From Vitrella brassicaformis CCMP3155 (Eukaryota; Protista; Chromerida): 64,000 bases of DNA. This document shows, piece after piece, positions 1 to 3,851 of this stretch (its first letter is position 1; every line of letters starts with the position of its first letter). The notes under the pieces were generated by a model. The model saw nothing but the letters and a program-made list of their open reading frames with translations, was not told where the DNA came from and made no database searches. A program made the position numbers and the translations under genes. Location of the stretch: contig CDMY01000441.1 in the NCBI GenBank assembly GCA_001179505.1, positions 12,071 to 76,070 on the forward strand. Direction: 5' to 3'.

Positions 1-1146
1 ATGCGGGTGGCCGATCTGGCTGCTTGCGCAGGTGAGTGACCTGATCGGCGGACGGGGCGACCCTGAATTTCGCCCATATCTGGCCTTTCTCCCTGTGGTG
101 TTCGTAGACGGTCATGCGGTCGCTGAAACAGATGTGCGACCGAGGCCGAGAGAACTTCATCAACACCAGGCCAGTCCCCAAGACGACCAACAGCTTCGAA
201 AAAAACGACTGAGTGACAGGACATAAAGCCAACATAACATGGACGTGGATGCATTGCAACATATACGCTCCCCAGCCGCCCAGCCCAGCCCAGCCCAGCC
301 CAGCGCACCGCACCGCACCTGTATGGCCAGAATGATGGTGCCGGTGGGATCACGAGGACCTACATAGGTACCCATTAATTACATTCCACACACTCACTGC
401 TCATGTGATGTGCCTATCGGCATGCTGTGTGCATCCGCCATCTGGCCCACCTACCTCCAGGATAGTTGATGCCCATGAAATTGGCCAGCGATATGGCGAA
501 TGCCCGGAGGAAGGGGTCGTGCTGCACATCAATCAAGTCGTCGTCAAAGCCATAAAACGACTGACCAACAGACAGAGAGGTAGCTGTCTTGGCTACCTGG
601 CCGTCCGTGGCCTTTTCTCAAGCGTACGCACTTCTGATCTGGCCATGATGACGAGAGCGAATGTGATCGAGAATGCCGCTGCTATGGCGATGACAAGGGT
701 GAGCAGCAGCCACCACGACGACTGAACCACAAACACAACACACGCAGGACAGAATTTGCAGAACTCATAAGCAAATACGGGATTGAAACAAGCGATCTTC
801 TGTCACTCACTGCAGACAGACCTTGGCCAGCCATCTGGTCGGTGACACGTCCCACAGCTTGTTGATGATCTTCACCTGGAAATCCGGATCACGAAACGCC
901 TGCTTCAACCTGCACACATCACCACGCGCACACAGGAACGAATCATTACACCCACAGTGCAAAACGGGCTGCCCCGCTGATCTCTGACCTCGTCGCGCCG
1001 TCTACGGCCCTCCTGACCCTGGGATTGTTGTACAGAATGTTATACTCACTGGGCTTCAGATGCGCGAAGTGATCTTCCCTCTGCGAACGAGTGCTGATGG
1101 TCTGCGAGAGGTTGAACCACCTCAGCGCCCTCTTGATGGGCGACAT
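1..1146 (-). CDS. Inward-rectifier (Kir/KirBac-like) channel, 5' part; the gene continues past the left edge of the window
   Basis: Hand-spliced exons (about 1146-955, 910-815, 724-600, 565-455, 359-319, 208-1) give M1 SWWLLLTLVIAIAAAFSITFALVIM, pore helix AFAISLANFMGINYPG, M2 TGTIILAIQSFFSKLLVVLGTGLVLMKFSRPRSHICFSDRMTV, then AKFRVA. This matches the Kir/KirBac pattern TGLVxxxFxRPRxxIxFS...RxAN. The three 3' junctions are in-phase GT-AG; the 5' exons and start codon are less certain. Confidence 0.75.
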
Positions 1147-1350
1147 TGCGAAGGAATTCGGCAGCCTCAGATGGCCTCAGGAGCGCTGCAGTACGTTGAC
1201 AAAATGACACAGAGATCATTCCATTCAATATATTGATTCCATTCATCGAAGAAAGTGACAGAAAGGCTCACATTACCTATCCAAGATCGGCATCCGCACT
1301 CTAAGCTCGCAGTGCAGGCCTAGGGTGCCTCCTGAAACCGCTGCCGGACA

Positions 1351-3184
1351 ATGGCAGAAACCAACAACGCCGACGCGCCTGTGACCGTCGAGGCAACTCT
1401 CGAGGTATGCGGATGAAGGCATGAATGAAAACGCATCGCCGATCTGTCTGCCGCCTTGTGCGTGAGTGTTGTGTGTGTCAGGATCTGCAGGCAGATCTGA
1501 GCCACCTGGATGACGACGACTGGGAGGTCACCCCGGAGCAGCTGGAGCAGCTCAAGGCCAAGTATGGCAGTGCGGAACATCCCCTGTTCATGCCCGAGGC
1601 GCCGCGAGACCTCACTGACTATCCGCAGCTGCAGGCCATCCAGCAGCTCATCTACGAGAATGAAACGCCAGAGTCACTCGCCGTCCACTTCAAGGTCAGA
1701 ACAATCGGAAGAATGCGACAACGAGTGCATGTGCGTGTTCTCTCCCTCCCCGCGTGCAGAAGATGGGCAATGAGTGTCACCAGGACGGCAAGGCCCACTG
1801 GCGCGACGCCATCGCCCACTATACTAAGGGCATCGAGGCAGGCAGCTCCGACAACACGGTCAATTCGCAGCTGTACTCCAACAGGGCCATGATACGACTC
1901 AAGCTTGGTAGAGAGCAGCCGCCTTGATTGTGGAGTGTCATCGTGTCTGTAATGATGTTTGCGTGTGTGATCAGATGAGCATGTGGAGTGTGTTGACGAT
2001 GCGCGGAAGGCCATCGAGCTGGACCCCACAAACGTCAAGGCGTAAGACACACACACACACACATCCCACTCACATCCCACTCACTCATCGCGACATACAT
2101 TGATGGATGAGATGAGCTATCCTATCCACTCTCACTCCTTCCTTCCCTTTCCCGTTTCCATGCAGCTACTTCCGAGCCGCCAAGGCTTCATACTATCTGC
2201 ATCTCTTCGAGCAGGCCATCCAGTTCTGCACACAGGGCTTCAACGCCAACTCATCCTCCGACCCGGACAAGACGGCTGACCTGGCCAAGCTGCGACAAGA
2301 CATCGAGCAGAAGTGGTCGGCACTGCGGCAGAAGCGAGAAGAGGAAAGGCGAAAGGAGAGAGAGGACGCGGCGCAGAGGGAGGTGCACAGTGGGCTGGTG
2401 GATGAGGCCATCAAGGCCAGGGGCATCCGTGTGGGACCGCTCCTCTATGACATGGCGTACCCTGCAGAGGTCAACGCGTGGCTGGCAGGCAATGGATGGC
2501 GGTCTGCATCTCATCTGTCATGCATGTGTGTGGCATTCATCCATCAGATGAAGGTGCGGCTTGATGATGAGGGACGACTCCACTGGCCGGCACTATTCCT
2601 GTGTGTACGCCCACGCACACAGAGAGAGAGGACATGACACTCCCCTCAGCTCTCTCGTGTAAGTCTTCATTCAGCTATGACGAGTATGGTCAGAGTGACT
2701 TCGTCATTGATATCAGAGAGGACCAAACACTGAGAGAGCATCTCGAGGTACACACACCGACACAGAAACAGAGATGCAGACCACACCACACCGCGACGGC
2801 AAACCTCTCCCCCTGTTACCCATCTGTCAATGTCAGGTGATGTTTCCCGGCGACCGGTTCACACAGTGGGACGAGCAGCATAGGTACGCCGTCGACGCTC
2901 TCTCCGTCTTCTACGAGCCGGGCTCAGATGACGGGGGCAGTCGTGATGTCCTGCTGGAGGTGTCGCCATCCCTCACTTTGTTCAACGTCCTCACCAAGGC
3001 CGGCAGAGTCCCCAAAATGCCCGTGTTCCATATACTGGTGAGCAAATGCATCGGGGTCATCGACGTGTGTGCATGTTTGGCCGACTGTGGGCGGCTGGTT
3101 TGTCAGGCGGAGGGCTCTGCTGCGTTGGCGACGTTCAGGGAGACGCACGAGATCAGGCCCTTGTCGTCAACGAAGAAGAGATGA
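1351..3184 (+). CDS. TTC4: TTC4/Cns1-like TPR co-chaperone
   Basis: Exons encode HPLFMPEAP...LQAIQQLIYENETPESLAVHFK, TPR helices (NVKAYFRAAKAS) and a C-terminal EHLEVMFPGDRFTQWDEQHRY...VPKMPVFHIL wheel domain typical of Cns1/TTC4. Confidence 0.85.
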
Positions 3185-3851
3185 CCTGCTGATTGCTTCT
3201 CTGGTTGGTGTTTTGGACCGAGTCCTCCTTTGCTGCGTGGCGTGATTACGACTCGCGCGTGTGTGGTTGATGTGCCCATTTCACCCGCACTGATTGAGTG
3301 TCTCGCATCCGAGTAATATATATGTACACACACGTAGCTAGCTACGACAGACAGACCGCCCAGTGGACTGGGCGGACACCAAAGCGTCGCATAAGACTTG
3401 CCGGCACGGCATAGACATGGCCATGCCATGGCATGGCATCATGGCATGGACACCACGACATTGTTTGTTTAGATACACTCACGCAGACACCACACACGCA
3501 ATTTGCAATTTGCGATAGATAGCATCAATCAACACATCCAAGGCAGGGAGGCCCATCAAAACCCTGCTGGAAGGCCTTCCTTTTCTTCCACCCACCCACC
3601 CACCCACTAGAACAGTGTCGCATGCGATGTCTCTCACACCTGCGATTGATACATACATACTGAGTGTGCATCAGCACATGAAACGGCTTGAAAAAGACGC
3701 TGAGCCACTTAGCAAAGACTTTCCCCGCCTCGCTGCCTGGCCCCCGCCACGCCAGCCCACATAATCACGTGCTTACATGGATGCCCACATCTGCGATTCT
3801 CATCTCACCAATCATGCCCATCTGTCTGTGTGCCTGCCTTCCTCCTGTCTG

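What the first reader, a model, noticed from the sequence alone, without database searches (positions are those of the whole stretch)
160..724. KirBac/Kir-like channel whose selectivity filter reads MGINYP instead of TTIGYG
Seen: AFAISLANFMGINYPGGPRDP sits between M1 and a clear M2/C-linker (TGLVLMKFSRPRSHICFS). It aligns residue for residue with Kir AFLFSIETQTTIGYG, so T-I-G-Y-G becomes G-I-N-Y-P and the pore-helix Glu becomes Ala. The filter codons (459-479) lie inside one exon, so this is not a splicing artefact. Established: TxGYG is required for K+ selectivity. Inference: a non-selective, non-K+ or non-conducting regulatory Kir-fold subunit.
Basis: partly seen in the sequence, partly recalled or inferred. 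Interest (0 to 1): 0.7.

Follow-up and report, generated by a model that had tools for sequence, protein, structure and literature searches.

The report
Kir-type channel gene without potassium filter
This alga (Vitrella brassicaformis) makes an intact, spliced gene of the inward-rectifier potassium-channel family in which the potassium filter TIGYG reads GINYP and a lysine points into the pore, so it probably no longer selects potassium; a bacterial precedent (NirBac) exists, but I found no eukaryotic one.

Summary
The gene lies on the minus strand, with exons at 1187-989, 909-822, 721-632, 560-455, 359-319 and 208-41, and it runs off the window start. Spliced contigs from four runs (three studies) skip exactly these GT-AG introns with no mismatches.

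The first 217 residues of the public Vitrella protein CEM13001.1 (396 aa) are encoded here. It matches KirBac1.1 from M1 to the end of the cytoplasmic domain (E 2.5e-10; hhalign 98.7%; Foldseek E about 1e-19).

All three alignments put GINYP on T-I/V-G-Y-G. All 128 other family members sampled keep TIG[YF]G.

New here:
- A second Vitrella paralogue (CEM08874.1, 55% identical) has GVDGP instead. The scan had also noted this one on other DNA (s1-205731).
- Pore helix, M2 and post-filter loop are the best conserved parts between the two paralogues.
- Both carry a lysine (K166) at the cavity-lining position of Kir2.1 C169. None of the 128 relatives does.

Pfam's membrane-domain models do not recognise the protein, and IRK_C scores below its cut-off. 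Function is untested. I favour a non-K+-selective, NirBac-like pore. A non-conducting Kir-fold protein is the main rival.

Verdict: a new variant of a known kind, of moderate interest.

The parts
989..1187 (-). Exon 1. Start codon ATG at 1146-1144; residues 1-52 and the first two bases of the R53 codon. Basic, Ser/Thr-rich N-terminus that the model predicts as disordered. The 5'UTR runs from 1147 upward.
   Evidence: Contig pieces 987-1187 with the joint 907|987 (cut +2) in 4 runs. tblastn of P0001 residues 1-53 gives 1146-988 at 100%.
1277..1289 (-). Inferred upstream 5'UTR exon end. This implies a 5'UTR intron at about 1186-1276.
   Evidence: The loose end of the X8 contig at 1187 continues with letters that match 1279-1289, then the sequencing adapter (sequence). 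This is an inference from one contig.
822..909 (-). Exon 2: residues 53-82, the pre-M1 / slide-helix region (…DPDFQVKIINK…PTRWLAK).
   Evidence: Joints 721|822 and 907|987; tblastn at 100%.
632..721 (-). Exon 3: residues 83-112. Holds the invariant W85 and helix M1.
   Evidence: Joints 560|632 and 721|822. Model helix 85-109. W85 and F103 are invariant in 130 sequences.
455..560 (-). Exon 4: residues 113-147 plus the first base of G148. Holds the acidic turret, the pore helix (128-140) and the degenerate filter.
   Evidence: Joints 357|453 (cut +2) and 560|632, no differing letters in 4 runs. Alignments.
459..473 (-). Codons of G142-I143-N144-Y145-P146. This is the position of T-I-G-Y/F-G in all 128 other family members sampled.
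   Evidence: Column counts; the KirBac1.1 alignment.
319..359 (-). Exon 5: the rest of the G148 codon and residues 149-161 (PRDPTGTIILAIQ). This is the post-filter loop and the start of M2.
   Evidence: Contig pieces 324-357 plus 2 letters plus 41-211 add up to 207 bases, the same as 357-319 plus 208-41. tblastn of residues 148-161 at 100%.
41..208 (-). Exon 6: residues 162-217. Holds the rest of M2, the C-linker KFSRPR and the first strands of the cytoplasmic domain. The gene continues beyond the window start; the next exon begins LLGSVAFKVS.
   Evidence: Contig pieces and the loose end at 41. P0001 residues 162-217 are 100% identical to this exon.
194..196 (-). Codon AAG = K166. This lysine sits in M2 one residue after the hinge position. 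By alignment it equals KirBac1.1 M135 and Kir2.1 C169, a cavity-lining site just below the filter.
   Evidence: Leu, Ile or Met in 128 of 128 relatives, Lys in both Vitrella paralogues. Position 169 of Kir2.1 is described as pore-lining between D172 and the filter in PMC2860589.
268..323 (.). Microsatellite (CCCAG/GCACC units) inside intron 5. Not coding.
   Evidence: Sequence; read laying flagged 268-323 as a repeat.

Best explanation
**What it is.** Window 41-1187 (minus strand) encodes the first 217 residues of Vitrella brassicaformis protein CEM13001.1. It is an intact, transcribed, intron-containing member of the inward-rectifier (Kir/KirBac) channel superfamily. Its parts are a slide helix, M1, an acidic turret, a pore helix, a pore loop, M2, the F-x-R-P linker and an Ig-like cytoplasmic domain.

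**What changed.** The pore has been rebuilt:
- the K+ signature T-I-G-Y-G reads G-I-N-Y-P, followed by a Pro/Gly-rich loop;
- the hinge Gly is Ser;
- the aromatic bundle-crossing residue is Leu;
- the acid at the top of M2 is Gln;
- a Lys (K166) occupies a cavity-lining position directly under the filter.

These changes are shared with a second, old paralogue whose loop reads G-V-D-G-P. They therefore predate the duplication and have been kept since.

**Shown here:** homology, expression, an intact reading frame, loss of the signature, and conservation of the derived state.

**Inferred:** the protein still assembles as a tetramer around a central pore, gated by its cytoplasmic domain and anionic lipids. 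It cannot build the four-site carbonyl K+ filter. I therefore favour a non-K+-selective pathway, probably of low conductance, for cations, comparable to the bacterial NirBac channels. The Asn or Asp side chain in the loop and the acidic turret would replace backbone carbonyls as the ion-contact points.
For: **Expression and gene structure.**
- Spliced contigs in 4 runs from 3 studies, with no mismatches.
- The public protein is identical to the exon translations.
- An MMETSP transcript ORF (P0022) has the same pore loop.

**Homology.**
- KirBac1.1 E 2.5e-10 over residues 79-321, KirBac3.1 6e-7, GIRK2 4e-3.
- hhalign against 128 canonical relatives: probability 98.7%, E 1.6e-16, residues 76-353.
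- AlphaFold model with a 130-sequence alignment: pLDDT 85-95 over residues 70-350. Its best PDB matches are all KirBac/Kir at E about 1e-19.
- Atlas neighbours are KirBac-type.

**Filter.** TIG[YF]G in 128 of 128 relatives, against GINYP and GVDGP in the two Vitrella proteins.

**Kept derived state.**
- The paralogues are 55% identical overall. By region: pore helix 79%, post-filter loop 83%, M2 77%, cytoplasmic domain 57%, the filter positions themselves 43%.
- They form one clade with 0.93 changes per site between them.

**Gating parts kept.** W85, F133, S136, P149, G174, F180, R182 and P183 are invariant or nearly so.

**Precedent.** NirBac1.1 and 1.2 lack TxGYG, still form tetramers and pass Na+, K+, Rb+ and others non-selectively (PMC4607889).
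Against: - No functional data of any kind.
- A ring of four Lys in the cavity should oppose cation passage. In Kir2.1, lysine-like MTSEA adducts at the equivalent 169C strongly reduce current in homomeric channels (PMC2860589).
- Pro at the second Gly position and Ser at the hinge may close or stiffen the pore.
- The filter residues differ between the paralogues. This could mean relaxed constraint rather than a tuned filter.
- Pfam does not recognise the membrane domain.
- The structure model leans on an alignment made almost wholly of canonical channels. It is a monomer, and its coordinates could not be inspected.
- Only one organism is known to carry this clade.
Confidence: 0.5

Rival explanations
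1. A non-conducting Kir-fold protein. The central path is plugged by the K166 ring and the Pro-rich loop. The protein would be kept for another role, such as a ligand or lipid sensor, a scaffold, or a silent partner of its own paralogue.
For: - Every K+-contacting filter residue except Ile and Tyr is lost. The hinge Gly is Ser and the cavity Leu is Lys in both paralogues.
- Positive adducts at the equivalent Kir2.1 site strongly reduce current.
- The filter positions proper are the least conserved part of the pore module (43%).
Against: - The pore helix, post-filter loop and M2 are the most conserved parts between the paralogues, more so than the cytoplasmic domain. A mere membrane anchor would not be expected to show this.
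- An acidic turret is kept in both.
- NirBac channels conduct without a canonical filter.
- No canonical Kir partner was found in Vitrella.
Confidence: 0.3
2. A pore with a new specificity. The lysine ring and the Asn/Asp loop would turn the Kir scaffold into an anion, proton or divalent-ion pathway.
For: - K166 is unique among 130 sequences and is kept in both paralogues.
- The carbonyl filter is completely lost.
- Asp stands at the first Gly position in the paralogue, as in filters built from acidic side chains (the comparison rests on my own knowledge of NaK and CNG filters).
Against: - The acidic turret and Asp in the paralogue's loop argue against anion passage.
- I found no precedent in the Kir family.
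- Nothing here tests selectivity.
Confidence: 0.1
3. Still a K+-selective channel that reaches selectivity by an unconventional filter.
For: - Ile143 and Tyr145 of the signature remain.
- K+ selectivity without TxGYG exists in unrelated channels, such as the kalium channelrhodopsins (abstract of 10.1101/2021.09.17.460684, listed).
Against: - The Thr and both Gly residues of the signature are replaced, and the paralogue shares only the Gly at the Thr position and the downstream Pro.
- Kir-family proteins with altered signatures that have been tested are non-selective (NirBac).
- Some disease mutants of GIRK channels lose K+ selectivity (abstract of 10.1101/2021.08.18.456735).
Confidence: 0.05
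4. A decaying gene or an annotation or assembly artefact.
For: Pfam fails to recognise the membrane domain. The stem branch in the tree is very long.
Against: - The reading frame is open across at least six exons with canonical splice sites.
- Identical spliced contigs appear in 4 runs from 3 studies.
- The paralogue keeps the same derived residues after about 0.9 changes per site.
- The structural positions that are invariant in the family are all kept.
Confidence: 0.02

Closest known systems
KirBac1.1 / KirBac3.1 (prokaryotic inward rectifiers; PDB 1p7b, 7swj, 1xl4)
   Same: Same architecture from slide helix to the end of the Ig-like cytoplasmic domain. Best sequence match (E 2.5e-10) and best fold matches. 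The M2 lower Gly, the F-x-R-P linker, and the Phe and Ser of the pore helix are conserved.
   Different: - About 20% identity.
- The filter TVGYG reads GINYP.
- The pore-helix Glu is Ala, the hinge Gly is Ser, the gate Phe is Leu, and the cavity Met/Leu is Lys.
- This is a eukaryotic, intron-containing gene with a long N-terminus and C-terminal tail.
NirBac1.1, NirBac1.2 and NirBac2.1 (PMC4607889)
   Same: A Kir/KirBac scaffold kept while the P-loop lost TxGYG. Two close relatives differ mainly in the loop itself, just as the two Vitrella paralogues do. This is the functional model for a non-selective pore.
   Different: - The NirBacs are bacterial (Anaeromyxobacter, Gemmatimonas).
- In NirBac1.x the whole P-loop is unrelated to KirBac, whereas here the pore helix is clearly retained.
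- The parts of the paper I read report no cavity lysine.
- Sequence kinship to the NirBacs was not tested, because their sequences were not fetched.
Oomycete Kir-type proteins (Phytophthora cinnamomi IUM83_15489 = P0011; Bremia lactucae TDH68558.1 = P0005)
   Same: Non-animal eukaryotic members of the same family. Bremia's second unit was the only genuine non-self relative that the 56-residue exon query found (E 6e-4); the other hits were repeat proteins.
   Different: They keep TIGYG or TIGFG and are recognised by Pfam IRK, IRK_C and Ion_trans_2. The tree does not join them to the Vitrella pair.
Filter mutants of animal Kir channels (for example GIRK disease mutants that lose K+ selectivity; abstract of 10.1101/2021.08.18.456735)
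   Same: Changes in or near the signature abolish K+ selectivity on a Kir scaffold.
   Different: Those are single pathological substitutions. Here the change is natural, involves several residues, is fixed and is conserved in two paralogues.
Vitrella Slo/BK-like gene with TVGRPR in place of TVGYGD (earlier scan note s1-239466)
   Same: Same genome, same theme: a K+-channel family member with a rebuilt filter.
   Different: A different channel family. I did not examine it.

Membership tests
Kir/KirBac inward-rectifier family (TC 1.A.2; Pfam IRK PF01007 + IRK_C PF17655) | Significant full-length sequence similarity to characterised members | tested here: met
   KirBac1.1 E 2.5e-10 (residues 79-321 against 54-287), KirBac3.1 6e-7, GIRK2 4e-3. 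hhalign probability 98.7%, E 1.6e-16.
Kir/KirBac inward-rectifier family (TC 1.A.2; Pfam IRK PF01007 + IRK_C PF17655) | M1 - pore helix - loop - M2 membrane module preceded by a slide helix | tested here: met
   Model helices 76-82, 85-109, 128-140 and 152-180 with pLDDT around 90. W85, F103, F133, S136, P149 and G174 are invariant columns.
Kir/KirBac inward-rectifier family (TC 1.A.2; Pfam IRK PF01007 + IRK_C PF17655) | Beta-rich cytoplasmic C-terminal domain joined by the F-x-R-P linker | tested here: met
   Alignments run to residue 321 and 353. Strands cover 187-340 in the model. F180, R182, P183, F189 and S190 are conserved. This domain lies outside the window and was taken from public protein P0001.
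Kir/KirBac inward-rectifier family (TC 1.A.2; Pfam IRK PF01007 + IRK_C PF17655) | Pfam models at or above their gathering scores | tested here: not met
   IRK_C scores 19.2 bits against a cut-off of 22.5. PF01007 and PF07885 give no hit even at E up to 10, for either paralogue or for the membrane part alone. Exon by exon there was nothing.
Kir/KirBac inward-rectifier family (TC 1.A.2; Pfam IRK PF01007 + IRK_C PF17655) | K+ signature T-x-G-Y/F-G in the pore loop | tested here: not met
   GINYP here and GVDGP in the paralogue, against TIG[YF]G in 128 of 128 relatives.
Kir/KirBac inward-rectifier family (TC 1.A.2; Pfam IRK PF01007 + IRK_C PF17655) | Tetramer that conducts K+ selectively with inward rectification | not testable with these tools
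   Needs expression with electrophysiology or flux assays. The residue at the Kir2.1 D172 position is Val (mapping plus my own knowledge), so strong polyamine rectification is not expected.
NirBac (non-selective Kir-fold channels, PMC4607889) | Kir/KirBac scaffold with a pore loop that lacks TxGYG | tested here: met
NirBac (non-selective Kir-fold channels, PMC4607889) | Prokaryotic gene closely related to KirBac (about 35% identity to KirBac1.1) | tested here: not met
   A eukaryotic gene with at least 6 introns, about 20% identity to its bacterial relatives and a very long stem branch. Direct comparison with NirBac sequences was not done.
NirBac (non-selective Kir-fold channels, PMC4607889) | Non-selective monovalent cation flux, activated by anionic lipid | not testable with these tools
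   Needs a liposome flux assay as.

The most novel reading that the evidence does not exclude
The two Vitrella proteins would be the first natural eukaryotic Kir-scaffold channels with a re-engineered permeation path: carbonyl filter replaced, plus a lysine ring in the cavity. They would conduct something other than K+, such as anions, protons, divalent ions or non-selective cations. They would also be the visible tip of a wider, unrecognised set of algal 'IRK_C-only' proteins whose pores Pfam cannot see (Atlas clusters from green algae, streptophytes and diatoms). Together with the filter-rebuilt Slo-like gene of the same genome, this would point to repeated repurposing of K+-channel scaffolds in chromerids.
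Probability: 0.2. Interest if true: 0.75.

Novelty: new variant of a known kind. Interest (0 to 1): 0.5.

Why it matters
The TxGYG signature is among the most invariant motifs in biology. Natural members of a K+-channel family that have dropped it while keeping the rest of the machinery show what the scaffold can do without it. So far the Kir family offers only three bacterial examples (NirBac).

This pair is eukaryotic, expressed and duplicated. It keeps the pore helix, M2 and gating parts under constraint, and it adds a cavity lysine seen in none of 128 relatives. That makes a ready experiment on how selectivity and conduction depend on filter and cavity chemistry: swap the loop back, or change K166 to Leu.

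The pair also warns that automatic names such as 'inward rectifier potassium channel domain-containing protein' should not be read as 'K+ channel' in algal genomes.

Tried and rejected
- **Exon-by-exon searches.** PDB phmmer on exon 6 gave KirBac1.1 only at E 0.37, plus spurious OspA repeat matches. The pore exon gave nothing. The Atlas features search on exon 6 gave nothing usable. Single exons are too short, so these blanks mean little.
- **The big search with exon 6.** It returned the full public protein. Hits P0002-P0004 and P0006-P0008 are repeat proteins matched on 'HFCFSD'-like words, and I discarded them.
- **Structure.** Single-sequence AlphaFold failed (pLDDT 45). Only the run with an alignment was used.
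- **Search for orthologues.** At first I took L001 for another species. The cluster look-up showed it is a Vitrella MMETSP transcript of the paralogue with one retained intron.
- **TcCat of Trypanosoma cruzi** (a cation channel without the signature) is not a Kir-fold protein, so I dropped it as a comparison.
- **Tree.** The Vitrella pair sits on a stem of about 9 changes per site. Its sister group (bacterial or oomycete) cannot be read from this tree.
- **Neighbouring + strand gene.** Only a sub-threshold TPR hint.
- **Literature.** No paper on Kir-like genes of Vitrella, chromerids or algae with altered filters was found.

Full report
**Where and what.** The finding lies on the minus strand. 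Three-frame translation and the raw sequence gave me an exon model with canonical GT-AG introns:
- exon 1: 1187-989, with ATG at 1146
- exon 2: 909-822
- exon 3: 721-632 (M1)
- exon 4: 560-455 (turret, pore helix, filter)
- exon 5: 359-319
- exon 6: 208-41 (rest of M2, C-linker, first strands of the cytoplasmic domain)

The gene then leaves the window at its start.

**Transcript evidence.** One look-up found eight runs that hold the stretch. Four of them hold about 0.33-0.37 of its words, which is what exons alone would give. Laying those four runs (three studies) on window 1-1500 showed one contig per run, 1,462-2,360 bases long. Each contig skips exactly 360-454, 561-631, 722-821 and 910-988, bridges the repeat-containing intron 209-318, and has no differing letter. 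All skipped parts end CT..AC on the + strand, so they are GT-AG introns of a minus-strand gene.
- The upstream donor turned out to be at 989, not where I first guessed. This fixes the reading frame of exon 1.
- A loose end at 41 continues into the next exon (LLGSVAFKVS).
- A loose end at 1187 suggests a further 5'UTR intron.
- These are contigs, so they show that the spliced form exists, not how abundant it is.
- No alternative exon encoding GYG or GFG exists in window 1-1400 on either strand.

**Searches exon by exon.** Single exons gave no Pfam hit. Exon 6 gave only a non-significant KirBac1.1 match (E 0.37), and the pore exon gave nothing. Because the family scans left the protein open, I spent the one exhaustive search on exon 6.
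- It returned P0001, 396 aa, 100% identical over residues 162-217.
- It also returned, at E 6e-4, the second unit of a Bremia lactucae tandem Kir protein.
- P0001 is CEM13001.1 of Vitrella brassicaformis CCMP3155. UniRef names it automatically as 'Inward rectifier potassium channel C-terminal domain-containing protein'.
- tblastn of P0001 onto the window gives six exon matches in order, covering residues 1-218. The public model therefore equals my exon model, and I used it by id from there on.

**Is it a Kir-family protein?** Yes.
- phmmer of P0001 against PDB sequences gives KirBac1.1 at E 2.5e-10 over residues 79-321 (chain 54-287), KirBac3.1 at 6e-7, GIRK2 at 4e-3 and Kir7.1 at 0.02.
- A profile of the two Vitrella paralogues against 128 canonical relatives gives hhalign probability 98.7%, E 1.6e-16, with 260 columns aligned from residue 76 to 353.
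- An AlphaFold model made with a 130-sequence alignment has pLDDT 85-95 over residues 70-350 and the expected helices and strands. Its best 50 PDB matches are all KirBac or Kir channels at E 1e-19 to 1e-15.
- TM-scores are moderate (0.4-0.56), which I attribute (not tested) to the loosely fixed relative position of the two domains in a single-chain model. The model also leans on its canonical alignment.
- Columns invariant in the family are kept: W85, F103, F133, S136, P149, G174, P183, S190, R210, L248, H264, P271 and F319.
- Pfam itself does not reach its thresholds. IRK_C scores 19.2 bits against 22.5, and the membrane-domain models give nothing for either paralogue.

**The filter.** Three independent alignments place G142-I143-N144-Y145-P146 on T-I/V-G-Y-G.
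- In the 130-sequence alignment, all 128 other sequences read TIG[YF]G. They are bacterial KirBac-type and metagenome proteins, oomycete proteins and both Bremia units.
- A138 aligns with the pore-helix Glu of KirBac1.1, but that column is mostly His in the sample.

Column counts show that more than the filter has changed. In both Vitrella proteins:
- the acid at the top of M2 (Glu in 127 of 128) is Gln;
- the hinge Gly (127 of 128) is Ser;
- the aromatic bundle-crossing residue (128 of 128 Phe, Trp or Tyr) is Leu;
- the residue after the hinge (Leu, Ile or Met in 128 of 128) is Lys, K166 (codon 196-194).

By the KirBac1.1 alignment, K166 equals M135. With the known equivalence of KirBac1.1 I138 and Kir2.1 D172 (my own knowledge), it equals Kir2.1 C169. 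PMC2860589 describes position 169 as a pore-lining site of the inner cavity between D172 and the filter. It reports that cationic MTS adducts at the cavity sites 169C and 176C cause 'very significant current reduction' in homomeric channels, most of all at 176C.

**The paralogue.** The only close relative in the word-index searches was P0009. Its contig L001 also holds the N-terminal half. One 63-base intron (GT...AG, 825-887) is retained between the halves. The cluster look-up shows it is not another species. It is Vitrella CEM08874.1 (P0019, 499 aa) and its MMETSP transcripts. The scan's first stage had noted this one separately (s1-205731).
- The two proteins are 55% identical.
- Identity by region: N-terminus 27%, pre-M1 68%, M1 65%, turret 35%, pore helix 79%, filter positions 43%, post-filter loop 83%, M2 77%, linker 75%, cytoplasmic domain 57%.
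- The string AFAISLANFMG is identical in both. Then INYPGG faces VDGPYG, and P-x-DPTGTIIL is again shared.
- In the tree the pair is one clade (support 100), with 0.93 changes per site between them and a stem of about 9. Their sister group cannot be read.

The derived pore (Gly for Thr, Asn/Asp for Gly, the cavity Lys, Ser hinge, Leu gate) therefore arose before an old duplication and has been maintained since. This argues strongly against decay.

**Reach of the clade.** Two word searches, a third with a wider profile that returned 1,031 canonical relatives, and two metagenome scans found no further member. These tools miss relatives without shared 5-residue words, and the exhaustive search used only a 56-residue query, so absence elsewhere is not shown. 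The Atlas features search places the protein (score 0.93-0.96) next to eukaryotic clusters from green algae, streptophytes and diatoms. These are named 'IRK_C domain-containing', and the Pfam membrane models are mostly not recognised in them. That is a lead towards a wider set of Kir-like proteins with divergent pores. I could not fetch their sequences.

**How it most likely works.**
- *Shown:* an expressed, intact Kir-fold protein that cannot form the canonical four-site carbonyl filter.
- *Inferred:* it still forms a tetramer with a central path. It keeps gating parts: the lower M2 Gly, a hydrophobic bundle crossing, and basic linker residues K179, R182 and R184 that could bind anionic lipid.
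- *Closest tested analogues:* the NirBac channels. These are bacterial Kir-fold proteins without TxGYG that form tetramers and pass Na+, K+, Rb+, Li+ and Cs+ with little selectivity. They are activated by POPG and inhibited by PIP2, and two of them differ from each other mainly in the loop (PMC4607889).

My odds on function:
- about 0.5: a non-K+-selective, probably low-conductance cation pathway, helped by an acidic turret (five Asp in residues 118-127) and the Asn/Asp in the loop;
- about 0.3: a plugged, non-conducting protein, because of the lysine ring, the Pro at the second Gly position and the Ser hinge;
- about 0.1: a re-specified pore (anion, proton or divalent);
- about 0.05: K+ selectivity by another mechanism;
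- about 0.02: decay or artefact.

That it is a Kir-family protein lacking the K+ signature I hold at about 0.97.

**Novelty.** The protein is already in public databases with an automatic Kir-domain name. Kir-fold channels without the signature are known from bacteria. What I found no description of is a eukaryotic case, a duplicated and conserved one, or a cavity lysine in this family. I rate it a new variant of a known kind.

I did not type or join the exon translations into a spliced protein for any tool. The identical database protein returned served instead.

Noticed in passing
P0005 (Bremia lactucae TDH68558.1; not in the window): A 956-residue oomycete protein holds two complete Kir units in tandem. 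Their filters read TIGFG and TIGYG, and Pfam matches IRK_C at two stretches. It is either a two-pore-style Kir or two neighbouring genes fused by annotation.
   Followed up: no
Beyond the window start (C-terminus of the same gene); P0001 against P0022: The public gene model ends ...PTEGAI. The MMETSP transcript ORF instead continues for 39 more residues (…RRSKRSRTLHL…) that resemble the paralogue's tail (…RSKTFHLGRN…). The last exon of the public model is probably wrong.
   Followed up: partly
window 1186-1289: The X8 contig continues past 1187 with letters that match 1279-1289 and then the sequencing adapter. This implies a 5'UTR intron of about 91 bases (GT at 1276-1275, AG at 1187-1186) and a transcript 5' end near 1289. 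That is only about 60 bases from the start of the divergent + strand gene at about 1352.
   Followed up: partly
window 268-323: A pentanucleotide microsatellite (CCCAG and GCACC units) sits inside intron 5. The read tool skipped it as a repeat.
   Followed up: no
window 1352-3200, + strand: A divergently oriented, intron-containing gene starts about 1352. Pfam gives only a sub-threshold TPR hint (E 0.039) on one exon.
   Followed up: partly
L001 825-887 (paralogue transcript contig): The MMETSP contig of the paralogue retains one 63-base GT...AG intron inside the C-linker codons (RPRP | HICF). The window gene has no intron at that place, so this intron position differs between the paralogues.
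   Followed up: partly
window 1078-1146 (residues 1-23): The N-terminus has 5 Lys/Arg, no Asp/Glu and 6 Ser/Thr in its first 23 residues, and the paralogue's long N-terminus is similar. This looks like an organelle-targeting peptide, but no predictor was available.
   Followed up: no
ESM Atlas clusters: The nearest feature-space neighbours are eukaryotic clusters from green algae, streptophytes and diatoms. They are named as IRK_C-containing, and the Pfam membrane models are recognised in only 0-23% of their members. This may be a wider set of Kir-like proteins with divergent pores.
   Followed up: no
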